64,000 bases of DNA from positions 806,001 to 870,000 of the forward strand of contig NW_025963784.1 of assembly GCF_023055435.1 (NCBI RefSeq), given 5' to 3'. Made by a program: the position numbers and the translations under genes. The notes beneath the pieces were generated by a model. That model made no database searches. It had not been told where the DNA came from and saw only the letters and a list, made by a program, of their open reading frames with translations. This stretch comes from Haliotis rufescens. Its lineage: Eukaryota. This document shows, in pieces, positions 15,725-63,933 of this stretch; positions within the stretch are counted from its first letter, which is position 1; the number at the start of each line of letters is the position of its first letter.

Positions 15725-16290
15725 CTTCAGGTCTATCTTCGTAAAAATTAAGGTCTACCTTCCCATTGAATGAGTCAGCAGCACTGGGTTCACAGTGACC
15801 TTAAAGTATCCACATAGCCTGACCTGGTCATGTTTTAACGATGAGAACGATGGGAGCGTCCAAATCACTGAGATCAAAGCTTGGATATGATACCAGACTG
15901 TTCAAAGTCTATCCAGATCAGCTTCAACATCCTCCTGGAGCGGATATGGCACATGTCTTGTCTTGAAGAATCTGGGTGCAGAATCATCTGGTAATTAGCC
16001 TTGAGGTGAGGTGAAATTGGGTTTAACGTCGCGTCCAAGATTATTGCACTTATATAGCGACGTGCATGTACGTGTGTGTGTGTGGCTGCTTGTACTAGTC
16101 CGGACTGATGCCGATTTATAGTGCTAGTTCACTGAGATACCATGCCGCAGTTTAACATGAATACCCCACTCAGACACAGTATACTGACTCCGAGCCGACC
16201 AGTCCTTGTTTTAGCCCCTAAATACATGGGTGCAGAATCATCTGGTACAACTAAATTTGCCTTGGCTTCATTCAACTTTACTAGTCTTTC
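15725..16290 (-). mobile_element. Decayed Gypsy-type LTR retrotransposon pol fragment (paralogue at ~51375-51785)
   Basis: Minus-strand translation gives PRFFKTRHVPYPLQEDVEADLDRL...VRLCGYFKVTVNPVL across frameshifts. It is interrupted by the SINE at 15994-16226. Confidence 0.7.
15994..16226 (-). mobile_element. 5'-truncated SINE with (TCACC)n tail, flanked by a 21-bp direct repeat
   Basis: TGGGTGCAGAATCATCTGGTA at 15973-15993 and 16227-16247. The 3' end is near-identical to the insert at 59125-59186. The copy in unit B (~51640-51724) is internally deleted. Confidence 0.75.
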
Positions 16291-17662: not shown

Positions 17663-20600
17663 AGGGAGGGGAGGTGTACCTCTATAAGATTACCTCGGGA
17701 ATGAGAGAAGGTGAGGCAGTTGTGTTCAGGCTTAATATACAGCGGGTCAGGGATTAATACATATGAACAATGTTAATATTTCATGGAAAGCTGATATTAT
17801 TTATTACACAATTTGAATTCATTGGGGTTGTTAAGTACACATGACCAATGTCCTCAAAGCCACATTCATATACATGTACGTTATCAGTAATAGTCTGCTT
17901 GACGTCGGGGTCACCCTGCCCTGGTATCAGCTTCCTTTTACAGCCCTGTGATAACCGCTTTTATGTTCGCTAACATTGTTGACAAGTGATTGTCGTGCAA
18001 ATAAGTGACTACGTGAATTAAGTTTATTTGTCTGTATCATCATCAAAACGACTTCTTTTACTTATGTTCTATCTTTGTTTTTCTATTTACTCTTTCCATC
18101 CCCTCTACAACAATTGTGTACTTAAATAATGAACATTGTTTGATGTCAACTTGTAGAAAATCCATTGTTGGATTAATCAATATGGGCTAAACAAGAATCA
18201 AGTATCGTGTTGCATCTCAGGGAAGGAGAAAAGGACATGGTATTTATCATCACAACCTCTAATACAACATATTTATGCATGACCTTACAGCTGATTTGGC
18301 ATTAAGGTGGGTTGATTTTAGAGTTATGTTACACTATTGACTGTTCACAGTTTTATTAATTAACATCTACATCACAGGTGACACACTAACAAACAAAGCT
18401 TTTTGAGGGATAGTTCATCTTCAGGATTACAACATTGTTTGCAATGTTATGATGTTAATTTCTATTTGCAGATATCTGGAAGGATGACAAATATCACTTC
18501 CGAAGTGATGGAACCCGGAAGCAGCCTGGCTCGAGTCCAGTCATAGTGAAGCAGTACCACAAGGCTTACACCGAGGACAAGACAACAACAAGGGCCTTTG
18601 TCAGAGAAGCATCGTATCTGTACAACCAGCCTCTGAAACACATCCTAGTGCAATATATCGGGGACCACACACAAGCACAGCCTGCTCCACAACGCAAGAA
18701 GCGTGGTCAACAGACAGTTAATACCTCAGGTGACAGTAAATGTAGGAAAGTAGAATCAACTGGTGGAGCTGTGCAGTCAGGTGTCACGGAGAACAGTAAC
18801 TCCAACCTGGACCCTGAAGATCATTCATCACCGACAGGATTGGAAGACAACGGTAAATCAAACACTATTCTAGGTGTAACATTGAATGGAGCAAAGGTGT
18901 CAGAGACAGAAACAAAGAATGATCACGGCACAAATCAGAAACGCTGCGGGACAGGAGATCATAGAAGTGATGATGACATTGAATATTTAGGTACAACGTC
19001 AGGCTCCCCTGTCAAGAAACCTCGTTTGCAGCCTCAAGTTGAAAATGACCACACAGTTGTAACCTGTGTCAATAACACACACTTTTCTTATCTGTACACG
19101 TTTCTAGAAGAAGTAGAAAGAAATCGTGATGTGATAAAGGTCGTGCAACAAGTCCTAGCATCATCTAGGTTCTGGAACAAGGACTGTACCAACAAAGGCA
19201 ATCCGTGCTTGTCACACATTGAAGAGGTCGACAAAAACTGGAATCTAGATTCAATAAAAGCAAGGAACTGGGTTAAATGTGCTGTTAATACTGACGGTCT
19301 GAGCTGGAACCAAGACCTGTCAGTTTACATAAAGCTCATCGCAGCAGTACTTGTTGGAGCATGCCATACCAGGACTGAAGTACAGGACTTTGTGAAAAAC
19401 ACTGAAGGATCCTCCTTCACACCTGCAGCATGTACAAGAGGACGTCCCCCTGTCACGTGACTGTACATACACAGTTGGCTGCTACATCATCAGAGGAGAT
19501 GTTCTGTCTCGCCTGGAAACCAACGAGTGGCTGACAGATGAAGTAAGTTGTCCACCTGCAATATTTACACAATCACACAAACTACGTGCCTAGTTAACCA
19601 TCCAAGAAAATCATTTCATAGAACATGAGAGGCCTTCGATTTCATCAAATGATGTCAGTATTAGATATTAACTGGGGGCGTGAGGGTGGTGAGTGGTTCA
19701 GTCACCTAATACTCATTGATAGTGCCTTGAGGTAGGCGAGCTAGAGCTTGAGTTTGGTTAAACGCCTCTTTTTGACAGTAGTGTCATGGTGCGTTGGATT
19801 AAGTTATGAAGAAAGTGATGCACATCTTTGACGTTAACCACTTTGTTGATTCCCATGGTGAATCTGCATAGCGAAATGCGGCGCCTTGGACCACTGAAAC
19901 CCCATCTTAAGATTAATACAGTAATTTTTGGCGGTTTCTTCTTTTTACACCAGTATTAGTTAACTATCAATTCATATAATGGTGCTAATTATCAACTCAT
20001 TGCAATGCATCTCGATTCTGCAATGATGACACTACTCACCTGCAATGGGCATTGTACACAAAATCTAGTACATCACGAGTCAAATTGTCAGTCATTGCTA
20101 ACAGCCGATATATTCTCTTCATGATGAATATGTGATGTGCAGCGGATCCTGCTTTGATTTGAAATTACAAGCGTTCCGTTTGAAGCGAAAGCATTGGGCG
20201 ATTAAACAGTATAATAAACATTCTAATAAATGAACTCTTTCCTGTCTAGATCATGGACTCATACCTGCACCTCCTGGAGGGAGAGTGGTGTTCCCGTGTC
20301 AGCTTCCACTGTCTGGTGCTGCCTACAGAGACAATCCTACTGTGGGAGGCAGGACAGTACACAGACAGAATAAGGGGGAAAGATGTGAGTGACGTGAGAT
20401 TTTTATATTTCTTATAATTCTTTCATTCCGAGTGCACCATTGCATGTCCACCCTACCATGAACAAGGTCAAGACTCGAAAGATATTTTGCAGTAATTGTA
20501 TATTTTTTGTGATAACATATGATTCGTCTATGCCATGATTGCGTATTCAGTATGCTAGAAGTTATCACTTGCAATTGTGCGCACGAAGCGACCATATGCT

Positions 20601-23527
20601 GCAATGGGTTTCAATTGAGTCAAAGCCAGTAACCCCATTGATCCCATAATGCTATTCGTTTTCAATATGCAGTTGCAAAAGCAGATATTGCACAAGAACA
20701 TATTCGTCTTGCTACATATTACTTTACGAAGTGAAAATCTGGTTGTCAGAGAGGGGTCTTTAGAAGTTCTAAGTTCCAAGTTCATGATACCAATTCACTA
20801 ATATCTCTGTTACTGCATCATATCCAGCTTATGTGAAGCACGTGTTTCTTGATATATTGATCGTACACCGGAAAGGCATTTGTTTTTGAACTTACAGGAA
20901 AATTTGACAAACTACACGTGGATCTTAATGCCAGTGAACATGCCACGTAATCAACATTGGGTGCTACTGGTGGCTAATGTCAAGGATGGAACAGTGGGCG
21001 TGGTTAATTCTAAACCCTCCTTAGATGTGGAGGACAAGGTTGTACAACACTGGAGGTAGGTAGACAGAACAGTGGGCGTGGTCAATTCTAAACCCGCCTT
21101 ATATGTAGAACTCCCATTTGTACAACACTAGAGGTAGATAAAAGACAGGACGTGTGGCTGCACATTATAAATGTTAAAACCAAGCTATCCAATTTGAAAT
21201 GTTGAAATGTTGATTTCTCAAAAACAAACATGAATGTAAAAAAGATCCATCGAAAAATGTTCGATACACCCACATTTGTAGCTTTTACTTTTGGGTAGAA
21301 GATATAGAACAATCTGTTCACAGGGTTACCCAGTTCCCCAAATTGGTACACTGTGTGAATGATTTAAACGCCATAAATACAGTTATGTCACTCATTCATT
21401 TAAACCATAACATCTGTATTTGCTAACATAAAACCTAATTATGGACAAAGCAGGAGAGAACATCAGAAATGCCAGGACAGGATATTTTAGGCACTGCTGT
21501 ATTTACCTTCTTTTCTACCTTTACTTTAACACCAGTCCACATGAGTTGAAGACTTTATCGCCATCGAGTAATATACATGTATTCCTCAGGCTCTTTGTAA
21601 ACTACTTGAAATCTACGTCTAAGGAAGGGAGCAAGTTATGGATGAAGAAACAGTACCCAGTGATAGAACAGTCTGATGGACACAGCTGTGGGATATTCGT
21701 TCTGATGGTAGGTTGGTTTGAAGCTATGTTTTTTATATGAAAGGCAACATGTGTCTCAATAACCACGTATGAAAGATAGCTTTTCATTTCTAACTTTCAT
21801 ATTCTCAGGCTGCTGATGCAATTTTCTCGGAGAAGTCTCCAGGCATCATGAGGAACTGTCACGTTGAGAAATACAGGCTGTATGTACTTCAGAGGATACT
21901 ACAGTATGCCAAGGTCAAGGGAGATATGCAAGGTGGAGGAAATCACATCATGGCAGTTGATGGACTCGGTAATGACAAACACAAAATTCAAACTTCCATG
22001 CTGGGGACAACAGATGTACTGGAAAATAGCTGTTCAATGACAACAGAACAAGGAGGTCCAACTATTCATGAAGGAACCGACTGTGCTATCGCCAGTGATG
22101 AAAGTATGCATTCTGGAGATCATTACTATGTAACGTAATTGTAAGGCGTTACGGAAGGTATTATACTTTAGATCTATATATGCAATGGTGTATACTCCTT
22201 TCATACAAACGGTATTTGTTTTTACAGATACTGATGACCACCCATGTTTGGATCAGCACCTGTTGCATAAGCAGAAGATGGCGTGCTTGTTAGTGGTTGC
22301 TTTGGCGGAGAATAACCTGGAGGAGAGGATGCTATGGGCAGGGTCTGACACAGGGACTCGCGTGGAAAGAGAAACCTACAAAAAATATATTGTTTGGGCA
22401 CTTAAGGCTTTTGACATCAATGAAGAAGAATACACTGAAAATGTGATGAAACATATTCTATCCCAATTGACGGGATGCTGTCTCCATCATGAAGCAGGCT
22501 CATATAGAATAAGAAATCATAAAGTAGCAATAAAGCTAAGAGAAATACTGCTACGTGATGTTAGGCAGTTGGTTGAAAGGATGGATATCGAGTTCATATT
22601 TCGTTATGTGACATTTAGAGATGATCCAACTGAAGACGAACAACTAAATGTGTCTTTCAACCTCGAATTGAAACATGATGATCTGCATATTGTAGCGAAG
22701 CGGTTTGCTACAGCTTTACACGGCAGAAAGTTTGCCTTTGTGTGCATGCATTCCCTATTCAAGGTAGAGACATTTGTTGATATGGTTTGGGAGAAATTGT
22801 TGCATAATATGAACAAGGACAGTTGTGTACTGTTGAAAGTATTGTCAAATAATGACATTGTACATGGATATTCCTTTCTGTTTTGGGCGAGCATCACAGA
22901 CAACTCACATTTGTTGAGGAGAGCATTGTTCAGTGTTCAAATGAATGCAGAGAACAGAAAGGAAGCTTTGTTTGGAAGTTGCTTTGGGAATAGTTTAGCC
23001 AACTTCGATTACCTGTTTTCCAATAAAAACTGGAAGTTGGATAAGTTGTGGATGACACTACCCAAACTCCCAAGACCTCTTATCATTAAACTGCAGTTGG
23101 CAGTTGCAGATGATCTGGGAGTAAAGTTTGGTAAATGTTCACTTTTGCCTGTATGGGTGGGTTGTCTGCAGTGGCTTCCAGATTGTCACATTTGATAAAG
23201 ATGAGCAAGAAGAAATACAGGTCAAGAAAGAATACATATGTACATTTTGCATCCTTGTGTCTAAAGGGCAAAGATACCATGGATACAATTAGAAAAATTG
23301 GAAAACTGAATGTCAATATAAAAGGCCCTGAAGGATCAACACCTTTACATTACGCATGTGCAGTTGGAAATGTTAGCATTGTAAGCTATCTGTTACAGGA
23401 ACGAGTGGACATTGGTGAGCAAAACAAGAAGGGTGAAACTGGGCTTCATTTGGCATGTATATATGGAAACGCAGAAGTTGTTACAATGTTATTACAGAAC
23501 AAGGGAATAATTCATGTGAAAGATAAT

Positions 23528-25010
23528 GCTGGCCGCACACCTCTACATGATGCAGCCTGGCAGGGGCACAGGGAGGTTGTGGAGGTGTTATTACAGAACA
23601 AGGCAAATGTTTATGAGAAACGTGTTAATGGCAGCACACCTCTACATGATGCAGCCTGGCAGGGGCACAGGGAGGTTGTGGAGGTGTTATTACAGAACAA
23701 GGCAAATGTTTATGAGAAACGTGATGATGGCCGCACACCTCTACATCTTGCAGCCTACCAGGGACATAGGGTGGTGTGGAGGTGTTATTACAGAACAAGG
23801 CAAATGTGAATGAGAAAGATAAGGAAGGCGGCACACCTCTACATGATGCAGCCTGGCAGGGGCACAGGGAGGTTGTGGAGGTGTTATTACAGAACAAGGC
23901 AAATGTTTATGAGAAAGATAAGGAAGGCGGCACACCTCTACATCTTGCAGCCAGCCAGGGACATAGGGAGGTTGTGGAGGTGTTATTACAGAACAAGGCA
24001 AATGTTTATGAGAAAGATAAGGAAGGCGGCACACCTCTACATCATGCAGCCTGGCAAGGACATAGGGAGGTCGTGGAGGTGTTATTACAGAACAAGGCAA
24101 ATGTGAATGAGAAAGATAAGGAAGGCGGCACACCTCTACATGATGCAGCCAGCCAGGGACATAGGGAGGTTGTGGAGGTGTTATTACAGAACAAGGCAAA
24201 TGTTTATGAGAAACGTGTTAATGGCAGCACACCTCTACATGATGCAGCCTGGCAGGGGCATAGGGAGGTTGTGGAGGTGTTATTACAGAACAAGGCAAAT
24301 GTTTATGAGAAACGTGTTAATGGCAGCACACCTCTACATGATGCAGCCTGGCAGGGGCACAGGGAGGTTGTGGAGGTGTTATTACAGAACAAGGCAAATG
24401 TGGATGAGAAACGTGATGATGGCAGCACACCTCTACATCTTGCAGCCTACCAGGGACATAGGGAGGTTGTGGAGATGTTATTACAGAACAAGGCAAATGT
24501 TTATGAGAAACGTGTTAATGGCAGCACACCTCTACATGATGCAGCCTGGCAGGGGCACAGGGAGGTTGTGGAAGTGTTATTACAGAAAAAGGCAAATGTT
24601 TATGAGAAAGATAAGGAAGGCCGCACACCTCTACATCATGCAGCCTACCAGGGACATAGGGAGGTTGTGGAGGTGTTATTACAGAACAAGGCAAATGTGG
24701 ATGAGAAACGTGATGATGGCAGCACACCTCTACATCTTGCAGCCTACCAGGGACATAGGGAGGTTGTGGAGATGTTATTACAGAACAAGGCAAATGTTTA
24801 TGAGAAACGTGTTAATGGCAGCACACCTCTACATGATGCAGCCTGGCAGGGGCACAGGGAGGTTGTGGAAGTGTTATTACAGAAAAAGGCAAATGTTTAT
24901 GAGAAAGATAAGGAAGGCGGCACACCTCTACATCATGCAGCCAGCCAGGGACATAGGGAGGTTGTGGAGGTGTTATTACAGAACAAGGCAAATGTGGATG
25001 AGAAAGACGA
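23528..25010 (+). repeat. Tandem 99-bp ankyrin array, about 15 units, with a 297-bp higher-order duplication
   Basis: Repeating GxTPLHxAAxQGHREVVEVLLQNKANVxEK. A block near 24515 recurs 297 bp later. Confidence 0.9.
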
Positions 25011-25310
25011 TAAAGAAGAAACTGCTTTACAAAAAGCAGAGGCACAACATCACAATGATATTGCAAGGATTATAACTGAGGCAACAAATATACATGACCT
25101 GACAACCAACCATGGTACAATTATAGATAGGTAAGAGCAATGTGGAAATGATGCTTTAGTTGACAACCCAAACACATATATTGTATACGCTGTTTTGCAG
25201 AACAGTTTTGAAACCCTACGAAATCATATGAGACCTCGAAGAGGACAGTACCATCAGACATTTATCAAAATATCTATCATTTATCTAAGAATATAGACAG
25301 AGCATTTCTA

Positions 25311-25796
25311 TAAGGCCCCCCAAACAACATACTAAAAGTCCCAAATCAATCAATCAAATATGTCATGAGAGACCAACAGTGTATTGATATTGAATGTCTG
25401 TCCATGTCTTGGAGGTCATCTTGGAATTTTGGGCCAGTCAGTTAGTGTGACAAGTTTTATGCACATACGTCCAAGCACACTGTTTCAGATATAAATCTTC
25501 AACAGTCTAAACTCATATTTAGGAAAGTGTCGGCCATCTTGAAATTGCCGGCCATCTTGATGTTTTATAGATTTGTCAATAGTCGAAAACGATCAATAGT
25601 TGTGAATATCATTTTAAAACCATAATATGACTATTTTGCAACAGAACAAATGCTGTTTTTCATCAAAACATTGAACCTCATCTGAAATGTTGAAAATACT
25701 ATTGACAGTTTGTTGCCATATTGGATTATGTAAATTAGACATATTTCCCAAACTGGGATTGCTTGGGACTTTAAGTATGTTGTTTTGGGGACCTTG
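25311..25796. mobile_element. MITE / non-autonomous DNA transposon in the last intron
   Basis: TIRs of about 33 bp (AAGG(C/T)CCCCAAA(A)CAACATACT(A/T)AAAGTCCCAA) flanked by TA. An internally deleted paralogue lies at 62918-63191. Confidence 0.75.
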
Positions 25797-27539
25797 TAGA
25801 CATGCATTGTGGTGAGATGAACTTTATTGCTATTTGTTCCAAGGGAAACCTTATTTTCCATGGGCTACATATGTCAACGGGGACTTGCAAAAACGCTGAA
25901 ATTATGTTAACCAATATTTGAACTTAATTAGGCTTCACTGTGTATACTATTGAATGATTTCGCTGGAGGCTTTTACATCTTGATTTTGTATTATATGTCA
26001 CAATAGCATCACTATTTTGATTAAGTCCTATTTTCTCTGAAATGTTGTGTCAAGTGCATGTGGTATTGTTTCAGGGTGACAACCGATGGCCAGTTTCTTA
26101 TGAAATCATCGTCAGTTCCACATGGAAGCTATAACAATGGCGGTTTGCTTACATCCACACCACCAACATCAACGTGCCCCGTGAACCACGCATCAATAGA
26201 ATTGCCAGGGGTTTATGTTCCGAGTCAACTGGGACAAGCAGTTTCCACAGACAGACAAAGTGTTATTGAAGAGATCGCTTTGCAGTCATCCCAACCATAT
26301 CATATAGACGGAAATCTTAACAACCTCCATACAGATCCTGCACGCATGGAGATACGTTCACCCAATCAAAGAACAGAAGCTATATATGGAAACTCAAGTC
26401 ATGTTCCCACCTGTGTCCATGCTCCAGTAGTTGGTGACACAGTGCCTAGTTCAGATAACACTAGTAATTCTGAGAATGTCATCATTCACTACACTGAGTC
26501 TGGGGAAAAGATAGAGCTGCAGCAGCTCTAAAAGTGGTCTAGAAAGGAGTTATCATTGATAGTATGGTGTACAGTGATACAGTATACATATACAGTTTTA
26601 CAACCTCCTTCAGGAGTCAGTCGTCCGAATTTGGTTTGCAGAAAAAAACGAGTTATTTGTCACTTGTGTCGATGTAGCATTGATGTTTCGGTTAGCATAT
26701 CAATTCCATAAAAAGCAAACATTTTACTCTACAGATGCTAGGACCATAGCTTACTTCATGACGAAAAAATCCTCTATATTGCTTAGAGGATTACATAATA
26801 GATTCTTTCAAATGTTCCTAACTGGACATATGCGTATTTCAGTGTGAACCGAACTTTCCTTAGGCATTGTGTTAAGTTGAATCGAGTGAGTGTGTGAGTT
26901 GGATTTAACGCTGCTTTTAACAGTTTTCAAGTTATATCACTGCGTGACAGCTTAATGTGGGAGGAAAGCCCGAAGTGATGCAGGTCTCAGACGTTTACCA
27001 TTTCGGTGATTTGTGTCAATGTAGTTTTGACGTTTCTGTTTGCATCTCGATTCCATAAAAAAACCATTGTACGTTACAAATTCTAGGAACATGGCTAACT
27101 TTAATGTTTAGAAGATTACATAACAGTTTCTTACAAATGTTTATAACTGAACATATGCAGATTTCAGTGTGTTCCAAACTTTCTTAAAGCAAAGTATTTT
27201 GTTGAAATTACGGGAGTGAGTTAAGATTGACGTACACAATGAATGTTTGCAGCTACATGTCGCTGTGTAAAATATGTACTTGCAGGAACACGTGGGTGTC
27301 TTTCTATCATAGTCGGTATTGTCACTTTGATTTGTTTCTGCACCATTTCCAGTGTCAGAGTTGTGAAGTCTCACTCCCAAAACGAAGCCATGTAACCTGT
27401 TGCAATATAGACTTTAAAGTACGTTCACGGTGACCTCATATTCAGGAATATAATGACTGTTTTTGTAAAACGATTCGTCGTGAAGCACCACTTTAGATTA
27501 GATTGTAGCTAAATATGGTGTACACAGTTTTATTTATAT

Positions 27540-51500: not shown

Positions 51501-52946
51501 GCGTCCAAATCACTGAGATCAAAGCTTGGATATGATACTCGACTGTTCAAAGTCTATCCAGATCAGCTTCAACATCCTCCTGGAGCGGATATGGCACATG
51601 TCTTGTCTTGAAGAATCTGGGTGCAGAATCATCTGGTAATTTGCCTTAAGGTGAGGTGAGGACACAGTTTACTGACTCCGAGCCGACCAGTCCTTGTTTT
51701 AGCCCCTTAATGCCGAGCGCCACATGGGTGCAGAATCATCTGGTACAGCTAAATTTGGCTTGGCTTCATTCAACTTCACTAGTCTTTCCCTTCCGAGTCT
51801 TACTTAATCATTATCGTTTGGTCTAAAACGTCTTGAGTCTAAATATATTGACTCCAACTAACAACAAAAACACATATTTCATAAACAACCTGTGATTTTT
51901 TTTTATGAAATATTGATTTTTAGTTTACTTTTCATTTTTGAAAGTCAGATTGAAACCATTTCAATATCTCAGACAAAATTGTTATGGATGATATCAATAT
52001 CGAACGGAGTTGAAACAATGTTGATACAATGTTTTTCAAGTAAGCAAACTCAGATCAACCAAATTTCAACATGAGAACAATGACAATGCTGGGATACTTC
52101 AATGGAGGAAGACATTATTAATTATAATTATCTGTGTAAGTTGGGGTACAGGTTATTATGAAAATTGTTAAAAAAACATCCTCGGCGACGAGGAGTACAA
52201 TGTGTGAAGCCAATTTCTGGTGTCCCCCGCCGTGATATTGCTGGAATATTGCTAAAAGCGGCGTAAAACCATACTCACTCACTCATTCTCTCAGTGAGCA
52301 AAGGTTGAACCAGGCAATAAAGATCAACAGAGGTCATTGTTACAATATCAGAAACCTTTGAAAACAATAGGTTTCTAACTGAGTAACATTTCTCTACTCA
52401 TGTCGCCAGACAACAATATTGTAATTTGTAATATTATGTTATATTTTGATCAAGACCTGATTTGAAACCACAATAAAGTATGTATATTAAGTGGATTCAC
52501 CTGATCACGAAGACTGACGCTTTTTTGGATTGTTACTCGGACATGTACAATGCTCATCTTGAAATATGGTCACACAGTGTACTGCAGAAATAATGCAGGG
52601 TAATAACAAATATCATCATTTAACGTCGTTTGGTAAAACGCGGCCGGGGCTCGAACCACCTATTTTCCGCTCTCCGGACAGACTCGCTTTATTTTCCCCG
52701 CAAGCCACACACAGAACAACAAACCAATAACAGAACGTCCCATGCGGTACAAGGAGAGACGTTTATGAAGCCCTGAGGCGTTATAACAAGACCAACACTG
52801 ATGCGTAGACAAATACAGGGTACATAATGAATATTCATGCTTGGGTGTAGTTCAGCATATAACCTTTTGTCATCTATAGGTTCAAATGAACAACTGATTA
52901 TTTATCACGGCTGTGTGACTCATGGGTCTATTAATAACTTTACAAA

Positions 52947-55900
52947 ATGGCGCCTAATCCGAAACCACCCGAGCCTTACCTGACAGGGAGAACCTCAGCC
53001 CTTAAAGTGGAGGAGATTGTTAACATTCTGAGGAGTCCAGATGAGAGCAATACCATCCAGACTGCCCCCGTCACACCCCAGGGAGGGGAGGTGTACCTCT
53101 ATAAGATAACCTCGGGAATGAGAGAAGGTGAGGCAGTTGTGTTCAGGCTCAATATACCGCGGGTAAGGGATTAATACATATGAACAATGTTAATATTTCA
53201 TGGAAAGCTGTTATTATTTATTAAACAATTTGAATTCAAAGGGTTTGTTATGCACACATGACCAATGTCCTCAAAAGCCACATTCATATACATGTACGTT
53301 ATTAGTAATAGTCTGCTTGACGTCGGGGTCACCCTGCCCTGGTATCAGCTTCCTTGTACAGCCCTGTGATAACAGATTTTATGTTCGTTAATATTGTTGA
53401 CAAGTGATTGTCATGCAATAAGTGACTACGTGAATTAAGTTTATTTGTCTATATCATTGTTTAAAACGACTTCTTTTGCAAAATGTTCTATCTTTGTTTT
53501 TCTTTTCACTCTTTCCATCCCCTTTACAACAATTGTGTACTTAAATAATGAACATTGTTTGATGTCAACTTATAGAAAATCCATTGTTGGATTAATCAAT
53601 ATGGGCTAAACAAGAATCAAGTATCGTGTTGCATCTCAGGGAAGGAGAAAAGGACATGGTATTTATCATCACAACCTCTAATACAACATATTTATGCATG
53701 ACCTTACAGCTGATTTGGCATTAAGGTGGGTTGATTTTAGAGTTATGTTGCACTATTGACTGTTCACAGTTTTATTAATTAACATCTACATCACAGGTGA
53801 CACACTAACACACAAAGAATTTTGGGGGATAGTTCATCTTCAGGATTACAACATTGTTTGCAATGTTATGATATTAATTTCTATTTGCAGATATCTGGAA
53901 GGATGACAAATATCACTTCAGAAGTGATGGAACTCGGAAGCAGCCTGGCTCAAGTCCAGTCATAGTGAAGCAGTACCACAAGGCTAACACCGAGGACAAG
54001 ACAACAACAAGGGCCTTTGTCAGAGAAGCATCGTATCTGTACAACCAGCCTCTGAAACACGTTCTAATGCAATATATCGGGGACCACACACAAGCACAGC
54101 CTGCTCCCCAACGCAAGAAGCGTGGCCAACAGACAGTTAATACCTCAGGTGACAGTAAATGTAGGAAAGTAGAATCAACTGGTGGAGCTGTGCAGTCAGG
54201 TGTCACGGAGAACACTAACTCCAACCTGGACCCTGAAGATCATTCATCACCGACAGAATTGGAAGACAATGGTAAATCAAACAGTATTCTAGGTGTAACA
54301 TTGAATGGAGCAAAGGTGTCAGAGACTGAAACAAAGAATGATCACGACACAAATCAGAAACGCTGCAGGACAGGAGATCATAGAAGTGATGATGACATTG
54401 AATATTTGGGTACAACGTCAGGCTCCCCTGTCAAGAAACCTCGTTTGCACCCTCAAGTTGAAAATGACAACACAGTTTTAACCTTTGTCAATAACACACA
54501 CTATTCTTATCTGTACACTTTTCTAGAAGAAGTAGAAAGAAATCGTGATGTGATAAAGGTCGTGCAACAAGTCCTAGCATTATCTAGGTGCTGGAACAAG
54601 GACTGTACCAACAAAGGCAATCCGTGCTTCTCACTCATTGAAGAGGTTGACAAAAACTGGAATCTAGATTCAATAAAAGCAAGGAACTTGGTTAAATGTG
54701 CTGTTAATACTGACGGTCTGAGCTGGAACCAAGACCGGTCAGTTTACATAAACCTCATCGCAGCAGTACTTGTTGGAGCATGCCATACCAGGACTGAAGT
54801 ACAGGACTTTGTGAAAACACTGAAGGATCCTCCTTCACACCTGCAGCATGTACAAGAGGACGTCCCCCTGTCACGTGAATGTACATACACAGTTGGCTGC
54901 TACACCATCAGAGGAGATGTTCTGTCTCGCCTGGAAACCAACGAGTGGCTGACAGATGAAGTAAGTTGTCCACCTGCAATATTTGCACAATCACACAAAC
55001 TACGTGCCTAGTTAACCATCCAAGAAAATCATTTCATAGAGCATGAGAGGCTTTCGATTTCATCAAATGATGTCAGTATTAGATATTAACTGGGGGCGTG
55101 AGGGTGGTGAGTGGTTCAGTCACCTAATACTCATTGATAGTGCCTTGAGGTAGGGGAGCTTGAGCTTGAGTTTGGTTAAACGCCTCTTTTTGACAGTAGT
55201 GTCATGGTGAGTTTGATTAAATTCTGAAGAAAGTGATGCACATCTTTGACGTTAACCACTTTGTTGATTCCCATGGTGAATCTGCATAGCGAAATGCGGC
55301 GCCTTGGACCACTGAGACCCCATCTTAAGATTAATACAGTAACTTTTGGCGGTTTCTTCTTTTTACACCAGTATTAGTTAACTATCAATTCATATAATGG
55401 TGCTTATTATCAACTCATTGCCATGCATCTCGATTCTGCAATGATAACACTACTCACCTGCAATGGGCATTGTACACAAAATCTAGTACATCACCAGTCA
55501 AATTGTCAGTCATTGCTAACAGCCGATATATTCTCTTCATGATAAATATGTGATGTGCAGCGGATCCTGCTTTGATTTGAAATTACAAGCGTTCCTTTTG
55601 AAGCAAACGCATTGGGCGATTAAACAGTATAATAAACATTCTAATAAATGAACTCTTTCCTGTCCAGATCATGGACACATACCTGCACCTCCTGGAGGGA
55701 GAGTGGTGTTCCCGTGTCAGCTTCCACTGTCTGGTGCTGCCTACAGAGACAATCCTACTGTGGGAGGCAGGACAGTACACAGACAGAATAAGGGGGAAAG
55801 ATGTGAGTGACGTGAGATTTTTATATTTCTTATAATTCTTTCATTCCGAGTGTACTATTGCATGTCCACCATACCATGAACAAGGGCAAGACTCGAAATA

Positions 55901-58900
55901 TATTTTGCAGTAGTTGTATATTTTTTGTGATAACATATGATTCGTCTATGCCATGATTGCGTATTCAGTATGCTAGAAGTTGTCACTTGCAATTGTGCGC
56001 ACGAAGCGACCATATGCTGCAATGGGTTTCAATTGAGTCAAAGCCAGTAACCCCATTGATCATAATGCTATTCGTTTTCAATATGCAGTTACAAAAGCAG
56101 ATATTGCACATGAACATATTCGTCTTGCTACATATTATTTTACGAAGTGAAAATCTGGTTGTCAGAGAGAGGTCTTTAGAAGTTCTAAGTTCCAAGTTCA
56201 TGATACCAATTCACTAATATCTCTGTTACTGCATCATATCCATCTTATGTGAAGCACGTGTTTCTTGATATATTGATCATACACCGGAAAGGCATTTGTT
56301 GTGAACTTTCAGGAAAATTTGACAAACTACACGTGGATCTTAATGCCAGTGAACATGCCACGTAATCAACATTGGGTGCTACTGGTGGCTAATGTCAAGG
56401 ATGGAACAGTGGGCGTGGTTAATTCTAAACCCTCCTTAGATGTGGAGGACAAAGTTGTAGAACACTGGAGGTAGGTGGACAGAACAGTGGGCGTGGTCAA
56501 TTCTAAACCCGCCTTAGATGTAGAAGACCCATTCGTACAACACTAGAGGTAGATACAAAAAACAAAGAGGACGTGTGGCTGCACATTATAAATGTTAAAA
56601 CCAAGCTATCCAATTTGAAATGTTGAAATGTTGATTTGTCAAAAACAAACATGAATGTAAATAAGACCCATCGAAAAATTCTCGATACACTCACATTTGT
56701 AGCTTTTACTTTTGGGTAGAAGATATAGAACAACTTGTTCACAGGGTTACTCAGTTCCCCAGATGGGTACACTGTGTGAATGATTATAACGCCATAAATA
56801 CAGTTATGTCACTGATTCATTTCAACCATAACATCTGTATTTGCTAACATTAAACCTAATGGTGGACAAAGCAGGAGAGAATATCAGAAATGCAAGGACC
56901 GGATATTTTAGACACTGCTGTATTTACCTTCTGCTCTACTTTTACTTTAACACCAGTCCACATGAGTTGAAGATGTTATTGCCATCGAGTAATATACATG
57001 TATTCCTCAGGCTCTTTGTAAACCACTTGAAATCTACGTCTAAGGAATGGAGCAAGTCATGGATGAAGAAACAGTACCCAGTGATAGAACAGTCTGATGG
57101 ACACAGCTGTGGGATATTCGTTCTGATGGTAGGTTGGTTTGAAGCTATGTTTTTGATATGAAAGGCAACATGTGTCTCAAAAACCACGTATGAAAGATAC
57201 CTTTTCATTTCTAACCTTCATATTCTCAGGCTGCTGATGCAATTTTGTCGGAGACGTCTCCAAGCATCATGAGGAACTGTCACGTAGAGAAATACAGGCT
57301 GTATGTGCTTCAGAGGATACTACAGTATGCCAAGGCCAAGGGAGATATGCAGGGTGGAGGAAATCACATGATGGCAGTTGATGGACAGAGTAATGTCACA
57401 AACGAAATTCAAACTGTAACGCTGGAGACAAGAGATGTACTGGAAAATATCTGTACAATATCAACAGAGCAAGGAGGTCCAACTATTCATGAAGAGGATG
57501 GACATGAAACACATGAAGGAACCGACTCTGCTGTCGCCAGTGATGAAAGTATGCATTCTGGAGATCATTACTATGTTACGGAATTGTAAGTCGTTACGCA
57601 AGGTATTATATTTTAAATCTACATGTGCAATGTTGTACACTGCTTTCTAACAAACGCTATTTGTTTTCACAGATACAGAGGACTATCCATGTTTGGATCA
57701 GCACTTGTTGCATAAGCAGGAGATGGCGTGCATGTTAGTGGTTGCTTTGGCGGAGAATAACCTGGAGGAGAGGATGCTATGGGCAGGGTCTGACACAGGG
57801 ACTCGCGTGGAAAGAGAAACCTACAAAAAATATATTGTTTGGGCACTTAAGGCTTTTGACATCAATGAAAAAGAATACACTGAAAATGTGATGAAACCTA
57901 TTTTATCCCAATTAACGGGATGCTGTCTCCATCATGAAGCAGGCTCATATAGAATAAGAAATCATAAAGTAGCAATAAAGCTAAGAGAAATACTGCTACG
58001 TGATGTTAGGCAGTTGGTTGAAAGGATGGATCTCGAGTTCATATTTCGTTATGTGACATTTAGAGATGATCCAACTGAAGAGGAACAACTAAATGTGTCT
58101 TTCAACCTCGAATTGAAACATGATGATCTGCATATTGTAGCGAAGCGGTTTGCTACAGCTTTACACGGCAGAAAGTTTGCCTTTGTGTGCATGCATTCCC
58201 TATTCCAGGTAGAGACATTTGTTGATATGGTTTGGGAGAAATTGTTGCATAATATGAACAAGGACAGTTCTGTACTGTTGAAAGTATTGTCAAATAATGA
58301 CATTGTACATGGATATTCCTTTCTGTTTTGGGCGAGCATCACAGACAACTCACATTTGTTGAGGAGAGCATTGTTCAGTGTTCAATTGAATGCAGAGAAC
58401 AGAAAGGAAGCTTTGTTTGGAAGTTGCTTTGGGAATAGTTTGGCCAACTTCGATTACTTGTTTTCCAATAAAAACTGGAAGTTGGATAAGTTGTGGATGA
58501 CACTACCCAAACTCCCAAGACCTCTTATCATTAAACTGCAGTTGGCAGTTGCAGATGATCTGGGAGAAAAGTTTGGTAAATGTTCACTTTTGGACATTGC
58601 CTGTATGGGTGGGTTGTCTGCAGTGGCTTCCAGATTGTCACATTTGATAAAGATGAGCAAGAAGAAAAACAGGTCAAGAAAGAATACATATGTACATTTT
58701 GCATCCTTGTGCCTAAAGGGCAAAGATACCATGGATACAAGTACAAAAATTGGAAAACTGAATGTCAATATAAAAGGCCCTGAAGGATCAACACCTTTAC
58801 ATTACGCATGTGCAGTTGGAAATGTTAGCATTGTAAGCTATCTGTTACAGGAAGTAGTGGACATTGGTGAGCAAAACAAGAAGGGTGAAACTGGGCTTCA

Positions 58901-61900
58901 TTTGGCATGTATATATGGAAACGCAGAAGTTGTTACAATGTTATTAAAGAACAAGGGAATAATTCATGTGAAAGATAATGCTGGCCGCACACCTCTACAT
59001 GATGCATCCAGGCAGGGACATAGGGAGGTTGTGGAGGTGTTATTACAGAACAAGACAAATGTGGATGAGAAAGATAAGGAAGGCCGCACACCTCTACATG
59101 ATGCATCCTGGCAGGGACATAAGGTGAGGTGAGGTGAAATGGGGTTTAACGTCGCGTCCAAGATTATTGCACTTATATAGCGACGTCAGGGACATAAGGA
59201 GGTTGTGGAGCAGTTATTACTGAACAAGGCAAATGTGAATGAGAAACGTCGAGATGGCAGCACACCTCTACATGATGCAGCCTTGCAGGGACATAGAGAG
59301 GTTGTGGAGGTGTTATTACAGAACAAGGCAAATGTGGATGAGAAACATCAAGAAGGCAGCACACCTCTACATGATGCATCCTGGCAGGGACATAGGGAGG
59401 TTGTGGAGGTGTTATTACAGAACAAGGCAAATATGGATGAGAAAGATCAAGAAGGCAGCACACCTCTACATCTTGCAGCCTACCAGGGACATAGGGAGGT
59501 TGTGGAGGTGTTATTACAGAACAAGGCAAATGTGCATGAGAAACGTAATGATGGCTGCACACCTCTACATAATGCAGCCTACCAGGGACATCGGGAGATT
59601 GTGGAGGTGTTATTACAGAACAAGGCAAATGTGGATGAGAAACATCAAGAAGGCAGCACATCTCTACATCTTGCAGCCTACCAGGGACATAGGGAGGTTG
59701 TGGAGGTGTTATTACAGAACAAGGCAAATGTGAATGAGAAACGTAATGATGGCCGCTCACCTCTACATCATGTGGCCTACCACGGACACAGGGAGGTTGT
59801 GGAGGTGTTATTACAGAACAAGACAAATGCATATGAGAAAGATAAGGAAGGCCGCACACCTCTACATGATGCAGCCTGGCAGGGACACAGGGAGGCTGTG
59901 GATGTGTTATTACAGAACAAGGCAAATGTGGATGACAAACGTGATGATGGCCGCACACCTCTACATCTTGCAGCCTCCCACGGACATAGGGATGTTGTGG
60001 AGTTGTTACTACAGAACAAGGCAAATGTGGATGAGAAACGTCAAGATGGCAGCACATCTCTACATGATGCAGGCTACCGGGGACATAGGGAGGTTGTGGA
60101 GTTGTTATTACAGAACAAGGCAAATGTGAATGAAAAACGTAATGGTGGCCGCACACCTCTACATCATGCAGCCAACCAGGGACACAGGGAGGTTGTGGAG
60201 GTGTTATTACAGAACAAGACAAATGTAGATAAGAAAGATAAGGAAGGCCGCACACCTCTACATGATGCAGCCTGGCAGGGACACAGGGAGGTTGTGGATG
60301 TGTTATTACGGAACAAGGCAAATGTGGATGACAAACGTGATGATGGCCGCACATCTCTACATGATGCAGCCTACCGGGGACATAGGGAGGTTGTGGAGGT
60401 GTTATTACAGAACAAGGCAAATGTGAATGAGAAACGTAATGATGGCACCACACCTCTACATCGTGCAGCCTACCAGGGACATAGGGAGGTTGTGGAGTTG
60501 TTATTACAGAACAAGGCAAATGTGGATGAGAAACATCAAGAAGGCAGCACACCTCTACATCTTGCAGCCTCCCACGGACATAGGGAGGTTGTGGAGTTGT
60601 TATTACAGAACAAGGCAAATGTGGATGAGAAAGATAAGGAAGGCCGCACACCTCTACATCGTGCAGCCTGGCAAGGACATCGGGTGGTTGTGGATGTGTT
60701 ATTACGGAACAAGGCAAATGTGGATGACAAACGTGATGATGGCCGCACACCTTTACATGATGCAGCCAGGCAGGGACACAGGGAGGTTGTGGAGGTGTTA
60801 TTACAGAACAAGGCAAATGTGGATGGGAAAGATAAGGAAGGCCGCACACCTCTACATCTTGCAGCCTCCCACGGACATAGGGAGGTTGTGGAGTTGTTAT
60901 TACAGAACAAGGCAAATGTGGATGAGAAAGATAAGGAAGGCCGCACCCCTGTACATCGTGCAGCCTGGCAAGGACATCGGGTGGTTGTGGATGTGTTATT
61001 ACGGAACAAGGCAAATGTGGATGACAAACGTGATGATGGCCGCACACCTTTACATGATGCAGCCAGGCAGGGACACAGGGAGGTTGTGGAGGTGTTATTA
61101 CAGAACAAGGCAAATGTGGATGGGAAAGATAAGGAAGGCCACACACCTCTACATCTTGCAGCCTCCCACGGACATAGGGAGGTTGTGGAGTTGTTATTAC
61201 AGAACAAGGCAAATGTGGATGAGAAAGATAAGGAAGGCCGCACACCTCTACATCGTGCAGCCTGGCAAGGACATCGGGTGGTTGTGGAGGTGTTTTTACA
61301 GAACAAGGCAAATGTGGATGAGAAACGTGAAGGTGGCAGCACACCTCTACATCTTGCAGCCTACCAGGGACATTGGATCGTTGTGGAGTTGTTATTACAG
61401 AACAAGGCAAATGTGGATGAGAAAGATAAGGAAGGCCGCACACCTCTACATCGTGCAGCCTGGCAAGGACATCGGGTGGTTGTGGATGTGTTATTACGGA
61501 ACAAGGCAAATGTGGATGACAAACGTGATGATGGCCGCACACCTTTACATGATGCAGCCAGGCAGGGACACAGGGAGGTTGTGGAGGTGTTATTACAGAA
61601 CAAGGCAAATGTGGATGGGAAAGATAAGGAAGGCCGCACACCTCTACATCTTGCAGCCTCCCACGGACATAGGGAGGTTGTGGAGTTGTTATTACAGAAC
61701 AAGGCAAATGTGGATGAGAAAGATAAGGAAGGCCGCACCCCTGTACATCGTGCAGCCTGGCAAGGACATCGGGTGGTTGTGGATGTGTTATTACGGAACA
61801 AGGCAAATGTGGATGACAAACGTGATGATGGCCGCACACCTTTACATGATGCAGCCAGGCAGGGACACAGGGAGGTTGTGGAGGTGTTATTACAGAACAA

Positions 61901-63933
61901 GGCAAATGTGGATGGGAAAGATAAGGAAGGCCACACACCTCTACATCTTGCAGCCTCCCACGGACATAGGGAGGTTGTGGAGTTGTTATTACAGAACAAG
62001 GCAAATGTGGATGAGAAAGATAAGGAAGGCCGCACACCTCTACATCGTGCAGCCTGGCAAGGACATCGGGTGGTTGTGGAGGTGTTTTTACAGAACAAGG
62101 CAAATGTGGATGAGAAACGTGAAGGTGGCAGCACACCTCTACATCTTGCAGCCTACCAGGGACATTGGATCGTTGTGGAGTTGTTATTACAGAACAAGGC
62201 AAATGTGGATGAGAAAGATAAGGAAGGCCGCACACCTCTACATCGTGCAGCCTCCCACGCACATAGGGAGGTTGTGGAGTTGTTATTACAGAACAAGGCA
62301 AATGTGGATGAGAAAGATAAGGAAGGCCGCACACCTCTACATCGTGCAGCCTGGCAAGGACATCGGGTGGTTGTGGAGGTGTTATTACAGAACAAGGCAA
62401 ATGTGGATGAGAAACGTCAAGATGGCAGCACACCTCTACATCTTGCAGCCTACCAGGGACATCGGGTGGTTGTGGAGGTGTTATTACAGAACAAGGCCAA
62501 TTTGGATGAGAAACGTCAAGATGGCAGCACACCTCTACATGATGCAGCCTGGCAGGGACATAGGAAGGTTGTGGAGTTGTTATTACAGAACAAGGCAAAT
62601 GTTTATGAGAAAGACGATAAAGAAGAAACTGCTTTACAAAAAGCAGAGGCGCAACATCACGATGATATCGCAAGGATTATAACTGAGGCAACAACTTTAC
62701 ATGACCTGACAACCAACCATGGTACAATTATAGATAAGTAAGAGCAATGTGGAAATCATGCTTGAGTTGACAGCCCAAACACATATATTGTATACGCTGT
62801 TTTGCAGAACAGTTTTGAAATCTCACGAAACCATATGAGACCTCGAAGAGGACAGTACCATCAGACATTTATCAAAATATCTATCATTTATCTAAGAATA
62901 TAGACAGAGCATTTCTACAAGGCCCCCCAAACAACATACTAAAAGTCCCAAATCAATCAATCAAATATGTCATGAGAGACCAACAGTGTATTGATATTGA
63001 ATGTCTCTCCATGTCTTGGAGGTCATCTTGGAATTTTGGGCCAGTCAGTTAGTGTGACAAGTTTTATGCAAATACGTCCCAGCACACTGTTTCAGAGATA
63101 AAAGCTTCAACAGTCTAAACTTATGTAAATTAGACATATTTCCCAAACTGGGATTGCTTGGGACTTTAAGTATGTTGTTTTGGGGACCTTGTAGACATGC
63201 ATTGTGGTGAGATGAACTCTATTGCTATTTGTTCCAAGTGAAACCTTATTTTCCATGGGCTACATATGTCAATGGGGACTTTGCAAAAACGCTAAAATTA
63301 TGTTAACCAATATTTGAACTTAATTAGGCTTCACTGTGTATACTATTGAATGATTTCGCTGGAACCTTTTACATCTTGATTTTGTATTATATATCACAAT
63401 AGCATCATTATTTTGATTAAGTCCTATTTTCTCTGAATTACTGTGTCAAGTGCATGTGATATTGTTTCAGGGTGACAACCGATGGCCAGTTTCTTATGAA
63501 ATCATCGTCAATTCCACACGGAAGCTATAACAATGGCGGTTGGCTTACATCCACACCACTAACATCAACGTGCCCAGTGAACCAGACATCAGTAGAACTG
63601 CCAGGGGTGTATGTTCCGGGCCAACTAGGACAGGCAGTTTCCACAGACAGACAAAGTGTTATGGAAGAGAGATACATCGCCTTGAAGTCATCCCAACCAT
63701 ATCATATAGACGGAAATCTTAACAACCTCCTTACAGATCCTGCACGCTTGGAGATACGTTCACCCAATCAAAGATCAGAAACCATATATGGAATCTCAAG
63801 TCATGTTCCCACCTATGTCCATGCTCCAGTAGTTGGTGACACATTGCCTAGTTCAGATGCCACTAGTAATTCTGAGAATGTCATCATTCACTACACTGAG
63901 TCTGGGGAAATGATAGAGCTGCAGCAGCTCTAA
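52947..63933 (+). CDS. CG-1-like / Ulp1(C48) protease / ankyrin-repeat protein, copy B (exons 52947-53127, 53891-54960, 55668-55802, 56313-56470, 57011-57128, 57230-57548, 57673-62737, 63471-63933; about 2477 aa if 59124-59198 is spliced out)
   Basis: All introns are GT-AG with compatible phases; the exon 6 donor is the least certain. Motifs: EEIVNIL..P.TPQGGEVYLY..WKDDKYHF..FVREASYL..LMQYIGD (CG-1-like); WLTDE, QHWVLLV, VVNS, EQSDGHSCG (C48 peptidase); TPLHxAAxxGH repeats. The only stop lies inside the insertion, at 59130-59132. Confidence 0.75.
58982..62620 (+). repeat. Tandem 99-bp ankyrin array, about 36 units, with 297-bp and 792-bp higher-order duplications
   Basis: Same consensus as the copy A array. 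An 8-repeat block ending GHWIVVE recurs at a 792-bp offset (for example 61342 and 62134). Confidence 0.9.
59125..59186 (-). mobile_element. 62-bp SINE 3'-end insertion in the ankyrin exon, with 13-bp TSD
   Basis: CAGGGACATAAGG is duplicated at 59112-59124 and 59187-59199. The insert matches ~16003-16063. Confidence 0.9.

What the first reader, a model, noticed from the sequence alone, without database searches (positions are those of the whole stretch)
59112..59199. SINE-tail insertion that looks like a newly born, frame-neutral intron
Seen: a 62-bp inverted SINE end with a 13-bp TSD interrupts the ankyrin exon and introduces TGA at 59130. The junction forms a strong phase-0 donor AAG|GTGAGG at 59124, and a branch-like TTTAAC lies at 59145-59150. 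All three downstream AGs (59180, 59189, 59198) are in frame, giving introns of 57, 66 or 75 nt. Use of 59198, supplied by the TSD, restores the original sequence exactly. Copy A has no such insertion. Inference: possible intron gain from a retroelement, or a splice switch between a short form (~4 repeats) and the full-length form. The polypyrimidine tract is weak, so it may simply be a null allele.
Basis: partly seen in the sequence, partly recalled or inferred. Interest (0 to 1): 0.75.

Follow-up and report, generated by a model that had tools for sequence, protein, structure and literature searches.

The report
Young SINE fragment interrupting an ankyrin exon
A very recent 62-base piece of a common abalone jumping element sits inside the coding exon of one copy of a large gene family; it has intron-like ends, but nothing yet shows that the cell splices it out.

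Summary
Bases 59125-59186 are the last 62 bases of an abundant abalone SINE with a (CACCT)n tail. It lies antisense to the gene and is flanked by a perfect 13-bp target-site duplication. About 28,000 copies of its 3' part exist in this 1.33-Gb genome. The fragment sits in the large ankyrin exon of copy B, adds two in-frame stops, and is absent from all 29 other family loci fetched.

Removing 59124-59198 (75 nt, GT..AG) restores the frame exactly. The public RefSeq model XP_048247946.1 (LOC125377905, Haliotis rufescens) does exactly this.

That model is weak evidence. RefSeq models of two sister genes carry gaps inside intact ankyrin ORFs; the one whose ends I worked through is non-canonical. 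Three RNA-like runs confirm two upstream introns of the family but show no joint at the insert. They also lack copy-B-specific letters at the sites checked, so they cannot decide.

The acceptor is unlike the gene's six real introns. The same "tail gives GT, duplication gives AG" arrangement occurs in 7 of 28 other SINE copies, so it is a by-product of integration.

Most likely this is a fresh disruptive insertion; intron birth is open. The scan noted the gene family elsewhere, but not this insertion.

The parts
59112..59124 (.). Left copy of the 13-bp target-site duplication CAGGGACATAAGG. Its last G is the first base of the candidate donor.
   Evidence: D2, 100% identical pair
59125..59186 (-). 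62-bp 5'-truncated 3' end of the abundant Haliotis SINE with a (CACCT)n tail. The SINE sense strand is the minus strand, so the gene strand reads (AGGTG)n.
   Evidence: family features as described in PMC4758252 (passages)
59187..59199 (.). Right copy of the target-site duplication. It supplies the AG at 59197-59198.
59124..59198 (+). 75-nt candidate intron (GT..AG, phase 0). Its removal restores the uninterrupted repeat. Public model XP_048247946.1 treats it as an intron.
   Evidence: not seen as a joint
59130..59132 (+). First in-frame stop (TGA) brought in by the insert.
59178..59180 (+). Second in-frame stop (TAG). Its AG is also the first listed candidate acceptor (57-nt intron).
59129..59135 (+). 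Two further tail-derived GT donors, at 59129 and 59134. With the three listed acceptors, both shift the frame.
   Evidence: read directly in the sequence
57673..59123 (+). Upstream part of the large exon of copy B: a helical region and about 4 ankyrin repeats.
   Evidence: joint 57548>57673
59199..62741 (+). Downstream part of the same exon. It stays an open frame in the same phase as the upstream part and encodes about 36 ankyrin repeats.
23660..23672 (+). Empty site in copy A (CAGGGGCACAGGG), a single copy with no insert.
16005..16238 (-). Second, longer (233 nt) 5'-truncated copy of the same SINE in the window, with a 21-bp target-site duplication.

Best explanation
A very young, 5'-truncated copy of the abalone SINE with a (CACCT)n tail was reverse-transcribed into the large ankyrin-repeat exon of one gene. 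That gene is copy B, RefSeq LOC125377905. It belongs to a tandem family of at least 24 members in red abalone that joins a CG-1-like domain, an Ulp1-type protease and a variable ankyrin array.

The gene strand is the strand that primed reverse transcription. Its nicked end ...AAGG paired with the RNA tail, so the copy begins TGAGGTGAGG..., and the 13 bases before the nick were duplicated. This mechanism alone produces AAG|GTGAGG on the left and ...AAG|G on the right.

As DNA, the insert breaks the reading frame's sense with two in-frame stops. The most likely outcome is a truncated or decayed product: about 4 repeats instead of about 40, with the stop 3.6 kb before the exon's end and one more intron downstream. 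Such a loss would be tolerated because the family is large and its repeat number already varies.

Shown: the insertion, its family, its youth, its uniqueness to copy B, and the frame arithmetic.
Inferred: the priming by microhomology, the consequence for the protein, and the absence of efficient splicing.
For: - Insertion and duplication are confirmed.
- The SINE is abundant and the fragment is identical to the consensus.
- None of 29 other family loci holds the SINE 32-mer, and all 23 aligned full-length paralogs run straight through the site.
- There are two in-frame stops.
- All six real introns of this gene are 101-763 nt, end in a pyrimidine tract plus CAG, and are 61-66% A+T. The candidate is 75 nt, ends in AAG after a purine-rich stretch, has 8 of 20 pyrimidines, is 53% A+T, and has two competing AGs just upstream.
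- Three tandem donors exist, and only one keeps the frame.
- Among 28 other SINE copies with a detectable duplication, 8 have an exact-restoring GT..AG. Seven of these use the tail donor plus an AG from the duplication, so the arrangement is a by-product of integration.
- No joint at 59123>59181, 59190 or 59199 appears in any of 4 runs, while the two upstream introns are seen in 3 of 3 RNA-like runs and 0 of 1 DNA-like run.
- RefSeq models of sister genes hold gaps of 39 nt (GC..TA ends, no alternative placement) and 486 nt (begins AA as mapped) inside ORFs that have no stop.
- A sister model (P0003) shows one more coding exon after the ankyrin exon, so the new stop lies far upstream of the last junction.
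Against: - The public model XP_048247946.1 maps exactly onto copy B and removes exactly 59124-59198. That could rest on real split reads that I could not see.
- The donor is strong. By my own comparison with the recalled consensus MAG|GTRAGT, 8 of 9 positions fit.
- Branch-like motifs exist at 59145-59150 and 59172-59176.
- The downstream 1,178-codon frame is intact, though this is also expected for any young insertion.
- The RNA-like runs laid carry only non-copy-B letters at the listed copy-B-specific sites in 57229-57548 and at 58947. The missing joint is therefore not a real test.
Confidence: 0.55

Rival explanations
1. A true newborn intron. The spliceosome uses the tail-derived donor at 59124 and the AG at 59198 supplied by the duplication, removes 75 nt and restores the original protein. 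The insertion is then nearly neutral, and this is a SINE-made intron caught at birth.
For: GT..AG with exact restoration. The RefSeq model uses exactly this intron. The donor is strong. SINE-made and other transposon-made introns are known, including ones where the duplication supplies one splice site (passages of PMC2394776; PMC11282704; PMC12130899).
Against: The acceptor is the weakest of three: AAG, purine-rich, with two AGs within 20 nt upstream, and unlike all six real introns here. It is shorter than any confirmed intron of this gene. No joint appears in 4 runs. RefSeq models of this family are unreliable inside the array.
Confidence: 0.15
2. Partial rescue by the better acceptors. Splicing runs from 59124 to 59180 or 59189 (57 or 66 nt). 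This removes both stops but leaves 18 or 9 extra bases, which adds six or three residues inside one ankyrin repeat.
For: Both acceptors are in frame and have better contexts (TATATAG| and GTCAG|, 11 of 20 pyrimidines each) than 59198. The CTTAT motif at 59172-59176 lies 14 nt before 59189.
Against: No joint was seen. These would be very short introns compared with the 101-nt minimum confirmed here. The public model does not use them.
Confidence: 0.12
3. The insertion is private to the assembled haplotype, or is an assembly artefact. The modelled 'intron' would then only reflect transcripts from insertion-free alleles or paralogs aligned across a 75-nt gap.
For: At the listed copy-B-specific sites, all 4 runs, including the DNA-like run, show only the other letter. 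A gap bounded by a duplication can always be slid to GT..AG if one exists. Sister models show gaps of that alignment kind.
Against: A perfect 13-bp duplication and a consensus-identical SINE end are the signature of a real retrotransposition event, not of a mis-join. No empty-site contig was seen in the DNA-like run either.
Confidence: 0.1

Closest known systems
Haliotis MESC-superfamily SINE (Matetovici et al. 2016, PMC4758252; passages read)
   Same: Terminal (CACCT)n repeats; an internal (CA)n microsatellite in longer copies; variable-length target-site duplications; very high copy number in an abalone genome.
   Different: Only the last 62 bases are present here. I did not compare the central MESC domain with the published consensus because the supplements are closed. 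ARAGORN found no tRNA in a full-length copy.
SINE-made introns: the p-SINE1-derived intron in rice catalase A, and Alu 'intronization' in human 3' UTRs (as described in Sela et al. 2007, PMC2394776; passages read)
   Same: A SINE inserts into an exon and the insert, or part of it, is removed as a new and often alternative intron.
   Different: Those cases have cDNA or EST proof; this one has none. The human cases lie in UTRs, whereas this one is in coding sequence. Here one splice site would come from the duplicated target.
Introners: transposons that create introns on insertion, with one splice site carried by the element and the other co-opted from the target-site duplication (PMC11282704, PMC9860276, PMC12130899; passages read)
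   Same: The element carries GT and the duplication gives AG. Removal restores the exon exactly. Seven of 28 other copies of this SINE have the same geometry.
   Different: Introners are defined by many spliced copies in many genes. Most are DNA transposons, with non-LTR retroelements about 5% of classified cases. I have one unverified case and made no genome-wide test.
Ordinary disruptive retroelement insertion in a coding exon (null or truncating allele)
   Same: Target-site duplication, 5' truncation, premature stops, and a redundant multigene family that can tolerate the loss.
   Different: Frame-neutral length and canonical GT..AG ends leave a way out by splicing.

Membership tests
Haliotis MESC SINE | 3' terminal (CACCT)n repeats | tested here: met
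   On the gene strand the insert starts TGAGGTGAGGTGAAAT. All 30 fetched copies show (GGTGA)n in that orientation. The feature is stated in PMC4758252.
Haliotis MESC SINE | Expandable (CA)n microsatellite inside the element | tested here: met
   (GT)n runs of variable length follow the 3' region in the fetched copies, read in antisense. This part is not present in the 62-bp fragment itself.
Haliotis MESC SINE | tRNA-derived head with A and B boxes | tested here: inconclusive
   ARAGORN found 0 tRNA genes in the full-length copy L010. A B-box-like GGTTCGATCCCC is visible by eye in the printed copies (the box consensus is recalled). A head 32-mer has 22,167 matches in the genome.
Haliotis MESC SINE | MESC central domain sequence | not tested
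Spliceosomal intron (newly gained) | Removed from the transcript, shown by split reads or cDNA | tested here: inconclusive
   No joint at the insert in X1, X3, X4 or X15. At the listed copy-B-specific sites these runs show only non-copy-B letters. Contigs break in the repeat array, and SINE depth swamps 59042-59275.
Spliceosomal intron (newly gained) | Canonical GT..AG ends in a phase that keeps the frame | tested here: met
   59124 GT, 59197-59198 AG, 75 nt, phase 0.
Spliceosomal intron (newly gained) | Acceptor context like the organism's real introns (pyrimidine tract, CAG) | tested here: not met
   All six real introns of this gene end in a pyrimidine tract plus CAG. The candidate ends GGGACATAAG with 8 of 20 pyrimidines.
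Introner-type element | Many copies of one element serve as spliced introns in different genes | not tested
   This needs the genome's gene annotation intersected with all SINE copies, which these tools do not offer.
Introner-type element | Element supplies one splice site and the target-site duplication supplies the other | tested here: met
   True here and in 7 of 28 other copies with a detectable duplication.

The most novel reading that the evidence does not exclude
The abalone SINE with a (CACCT)n tail may be a latent animal 'introner'. Its tail primes on ...AG(G) target ends. About a quarter of its insertions, read on the priming strand, are therefore born with a consensus donor (NAG|GTGAGG) and an AG from the duplication that restores the host sequence exactly. 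Copy B would be such an intron caught within its first generations, in a coding exon, and the same element may have seeded other short introns in abalone genes.
Probability: 0.13. Interest if true: 0.75.

Novelty: new member of a known kind. Interest (0 to 1): 0.4.

Why it matters
Recently gained introns with a known source are rare in animals. Proven SINE-made introns in coding sequence are very few; the rice catalase A case is the one cited in PMC2394776.

If the 75 nt are really spliced, this would be a dated, mechanistically transparent intron birth in a mollusc. It would also point to a SINE whose integration chemistry pre-forms both splice sites.

If they are not spliced, this is an ordinary fresh knockout of one member of a redundant, fast-changing gene family. 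It would also be a warning that the public gene model hides two stop codons behind an unverified 75-nt intron.

Tried and rejected
- A BLAST-type search of the genome with the 62-bp insert found nothing, not even itself, because very common words are skipped. I replaced it with pattern counts.
- My first Pfam call used the wrong frame and was rejected for stop codons. I corrected the coordinates. That gave ankyrin families only; the two small upstream exons gave no family at E up to 0.01.
- I hoped the RNA contigs would show split or unsplit forms. They confirm two family introns but say nothing on the insert.
- I tested whether the contigs came from copy A. Only 23 of the 39 listed other letters equal copy A. 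Over a set of 30 sites taken from the X1 columns, no assembled paralog fits all; the best fit 27 of 30, and copy B fits 11 of 30.
- A protein search with the 114-residue exon piece just before the insert looked for short transcript-derived fragments that would show what follows ...WQGHK. It found 1 unrelated protein among 41 candidates.
- Folding the 75 nt as RNA gave nothing unusual (z = -1.33). The 7-bp inverted repeat inside the insert is part of the SINE end.
- The duplication finder mis-assigned the window's own copy, picking a 22-nt match to the next ankyrin repeat. I dropped that row from the 28-copy count. Three of the other 31 copies examined gave no duplication (L001, L012, L029).
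- A word search of earlier findings for a similar SINE/intron note found nothing.
- Literature: four searches. The intron-length search yielded nothing I used. I did not search for the locus name, so I make no claim that this locus is absent from print.
- A splice switch with a function of its own (short versus long form) stays pure conjecture and I did not pursue it.
- I could not see the supplements of PMC4758252, which hold the SINE consensus sequences and duplication tables.
Full report
WHAT IS THERE

The window holds two copies of a long gene, copy A near 17,400-26,500 and copy B near 52,900-63,900. In copy B, the large exon that encodes the ankyrin repeats is interrupted at 59125-59186 by 62 bases. 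These are flanked by a perfect 13-base direct repeat, CAGGGACATAAGG, at 59112-59124 and 59187-59199. At the homologous place, copy A has a single copy of that 13-mer (with three base differences) and lacks exactly 75 columns.

The open frames on either side, 57693..59132 and 59205..62741, are in the same phase. Read straight through, the insert gives ...WQGHKVR*GEMGFNVASKIIALI*RRQGHKEVVEQL, so it carries two in-frame stops, at 59130 and 59178.

A fourth AG ends at 59162. Two more GT donors lie in the tail, at 59129 and 59134, and with any of the three listed acceptors they would shift the frame.

WHAT THE INSERT IS

A 32-mer from the insert occurs 27,920 times in this 1.33-Gb genome with up to two mismatches (reversed-pattern control 0). 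It occurs once more in the window, at 16018.

The 30 copies fetched show an element of about 350-400 bases. On the strand shown here it begins with (GGTGA)n. It then contains the region found in the insert and a variable (GT)n run, and it ends in a GC-rich head with a B-box-like motif. Most copies have target-site duplications of 7-21 bases.

In sense orientation this is a SINE ending in (CACCT)n with an internal (CA)n microsatellite. Matetovici et al. 2016 describe exactly this for the Haliotis members of their MESC superfamily (PMC4758252, passages). I could not compare the central domain because the supplements are closed, and ARAGORN found no tRNA in one full copy.

Protein names returned by public sources show that the genome is the red abalone, Haliotis rufescens.

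The insert is the last 62 bases of this SINE, antisense to the gene. It is identical to the majority consensus of the 30 copies at all 62 positions, 32 of which were the selection pattern. With its perfect duplication, it is a very young, strongly 5'-truncated retrotransposition event.

Shorter copies are common. In the sample, insert lengths ran from 164 to 405 bases. The 3' 32-mer is more frequent than a head 32-mer (27,920 against 22,167), although the head may be shared with other families.

THE HOST GENE

Copy B belongs to a tandem family. A 1,672-base probe finds 24 full-length matches including itself, plus 6 partial ones, on contigs C6, C72 and C594. The nearest relatives are 97% identical.

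None of the 29 other loci holds the SINE 32-mer, and all 23 aligned full-length paralogs run uninterrupted through the site. The insertion is therefore unique to copy B.

The three nearest paralogs have intact ankyrin exons with about 19, 35 and 8 repeats. Repeat number is evidently free to vary in this family.

A sister model (P0003) shows that one more coding exon follows the ankyrin exon. Copy B has the homologous frame at 63472..63933. The new stop at 59130 therefore lies about 3.6 kb before the end of a non-terminal exon. By the usual rule (recalled, not tested here) this position invites nonsense-mediated decay.

THE PUBLIC GENE MODEL

A protein search with the intact exon of a 97% paralog, followed by a cluster look-up, brought up P0128. 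This is XP_048247946.1, 'uncharacterized protein LOC125377905 [Haliotis rufescens]', 1,187 residues.

Exact matching lays residues 1-1182, except residue 661 where two segments meet, on copy B. The segments start or end at 52947-53126, 53890-54960, 55668-55802, 56313-56471, 57012-57128, 57230-57547, 57675-59123 and 59199-59312. The annotation thus already treats 59124-59198 as an intron, giving ...WQGHK|EVVEQLLL...

The model then ends oddly. After ...REVVEV come five residues, QHTST, and a stop. These five read like the ankyrin repeat in a shifted frame, and the exact mapper could place them only on an earlier stretch.

How much is this model worth? Two sister models that I could lay on fetched loci carry gaps inside the repeat array although the genomic frame there has no stop. 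One is a 39-base gap in L042 that begins GC, ends TA and cannot be slid to any other placement. The other is a 486-base gap in L046 that begins AA as mapped. Such gaps look like evidence from other alleles or paralogs aligned onto a repeat array, not like splicing. A 75-base gap bounded by a duplication can be placed at 14 positions, and an aligner will choose the one that reads GT..AG. The model is therefore a lead, not proof.

READS

One search for runs and one laying of reads were allowed. I laid four runs on 56000-59500. Three have a size typical of transcriptomes and are labelled 'RNA?' (X1, X3, X4). One is DNA-sized (X15).

X1, X3 and X4 each have one contig joining 57127>57229 (101 nt) and 57548>57673 (124 nt) with GT..AG ends; X15 has none. 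The three are therefore RNA, and the family is expressed and spliced as modelled.

No run shows a joint from 59123 to 59181, 59190 or 59199. This is weak evidence for three reasons.
- The longest contig pieces listed stop at 58939-59006, inside the repeat array.
- Depth over 59042-59275 is swamped by other SINE copies, up to 2.2 million in X15.
- At the listed copy-B-specific sites in 57229-57548 and at 58947, all four runs show only the other letter.

Of the 39 listed other letters, 23 equal copy A. Over a set of 30 sites taken from the X1 columns, copy B fits 11 and the best assembled paralogs fit 27. These animals therefore carry and express a relative of copy B that is not in the assembly, and they cannot speak for copy B itself.

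A further protein search for short transcript-derived fragments ending near ...WQGHK found none.

HOW GOOD ARE THE SPLICE SIGNALS?

The donor AAG|GTGAGG fits 8 of 9 positions of the recalled metazoan consensus.

The six real introns of this gene are 101-763 nt long and 61-66% A+T, and all end in a pyrimidine tract plus CAG. The 75-nt candidate is 53% A+T. It ends GGGACATAAG, has 8 of 20 pyrimidines before the AG, and has two other AGs 9 and 18 bases upstream.

If the insert is spliced at all, the acceptors at 59180 or 59189 look more likely. They would leave six or three extra residues in one repeat.

WHY THE ENDS LOOK LIKE AN INTRON

On the gene strand the order is duplication, tail complement, element, duplication. 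This is the order expected for the strand whose nicked 3' end primed reverse transcription (established model of target-primed reverse transcription, recalled). The end ...AAGG can pair with the RNA tail ...CACCU, and extension then writes TGAGGTGAGG... A target ending in AG(G) therefore yields NAG|GTGAGG on the left and, through the duplication, ...AG|G on the right.

I tested this on the copies in hand. Of the 31 other copies examined, 28 had a detectable duplication. Eight of these have a GT..AG pair whose removal would restore the target exactly. Seven of the eight use the tail donor and an AG from the duplication. The sample is small, and the copies were taken in genome order from contig C1.

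The intron-like geometry is therefore a frequent by-product of how this SINE integrates. It is mostly found in non-coding DNA, where it means nothing. The same fact feeds the bold reading: whenever the element lands antisense in an exon, about a quarter of insertions would be born with both splice sites in place.

VERDICT

The best-supported reading (0.55) is a fresh, disruptive SINE insertion in one member of a large, redundant family. Its intron-like ends follow from the integration mechanism, and its splicing is unproven.

Real intron birth, either exact (0.15) or through the better acceptors (0.12), is not excluded and is assumed by the public annotation. An artefact or private-allele reading of the model (0.10) also remains open.

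COMPARISON WITH WHAT IS KNOWN

SINE-made introns have been reported: in the coding region of rice catalase A, and as Alu 'intronization' in human 3' UTRs (PMC2394776, passages). Transposons that carry one splice site and borrow the other from their duplication are the 'introners' (PMC11282704, PMC9860276, PMC12130899, passages). Non-LTR retroelements make up about 5% of classified introner families.

If validated, this would be a new member of a known kind, notable for being in an animal coding exon and datable. As it stands, it is a well-documented candidate.

Earlier scan notes had described the gene family in other windows, but not this insertion.

Noticed in passing
window 23135-23195 and 23776-23809 (copy A): Copy A's large exon is broken into three overlapping frames (22185..23195, 23135..23809, 23776..25134). 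The alignment shows a one-base gap in copy A and its twin locus (L038, L039) inside a repeat. Copy A itself therefore looks frame-shifted, so it may be a pseudogene or carry assembly errors.
   Followed up: partly
L042:3469-3507 and L046:3693-4178: RefSeq models of two sister genes (P0002, P0121) skip 39 and 486 bases inside ankyrin arrays whose genomic frame has no stop. The 39-base gap begins GC and ends TA. These are probably alignment artefacts in the public annotation.
   Followed up: partly
window 59307-59321 and every 99 bases along 58982-62620: Each ankyrin repeat contains GAG|GTGTTATTACAG|AAC, that is a GT followed by a pyrimidine-rich stretch and CAG. The public model of copy B ends its mapped part at such a motif (59312) and then shifts frame.
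   Followed up: no
G000 contigs C6, C72 and C594 (loci L033/L034, L038/L039, L040/L041, L046/L047, L049/L050): In these pairs of family loci on different contigs or far apart, the two members differ from copy B by the same or nearly the same number of bases. The small contigs may be alternative haplotypes or recent block duplications of the array on C594. Copy B has no partner closer than 97%.
   Followed up: no
window 15983-16238: The second copy of the same SINE is 233 bases long and 5'-truncated. It has a 21-base target-site duplication and about eight extra bases between the duplication and the tail.
   Followed up: partly
window 59149-59155 and 59180-59186: A perfect 7-bp inverted repeat lies inside the SINE end (ACGTCGC / GCGACGT, 24 bases apart). 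In the pre-mRNA it would overlap the A at 59149 inside the branch-like TTTAAC and the G of the first listed acceptor. The fold of the 75 nt as a whole is not unusual (z = -1.33).
   Followed up: partly
window 60536-62134: The downstream array of copy B contains long, nearly identical internal blocks; for example, the minus-strand ORFs 60536..61342 and 61361..62134 give almost the same translation. This points to recent block duplication within the array.
   Followed up: no
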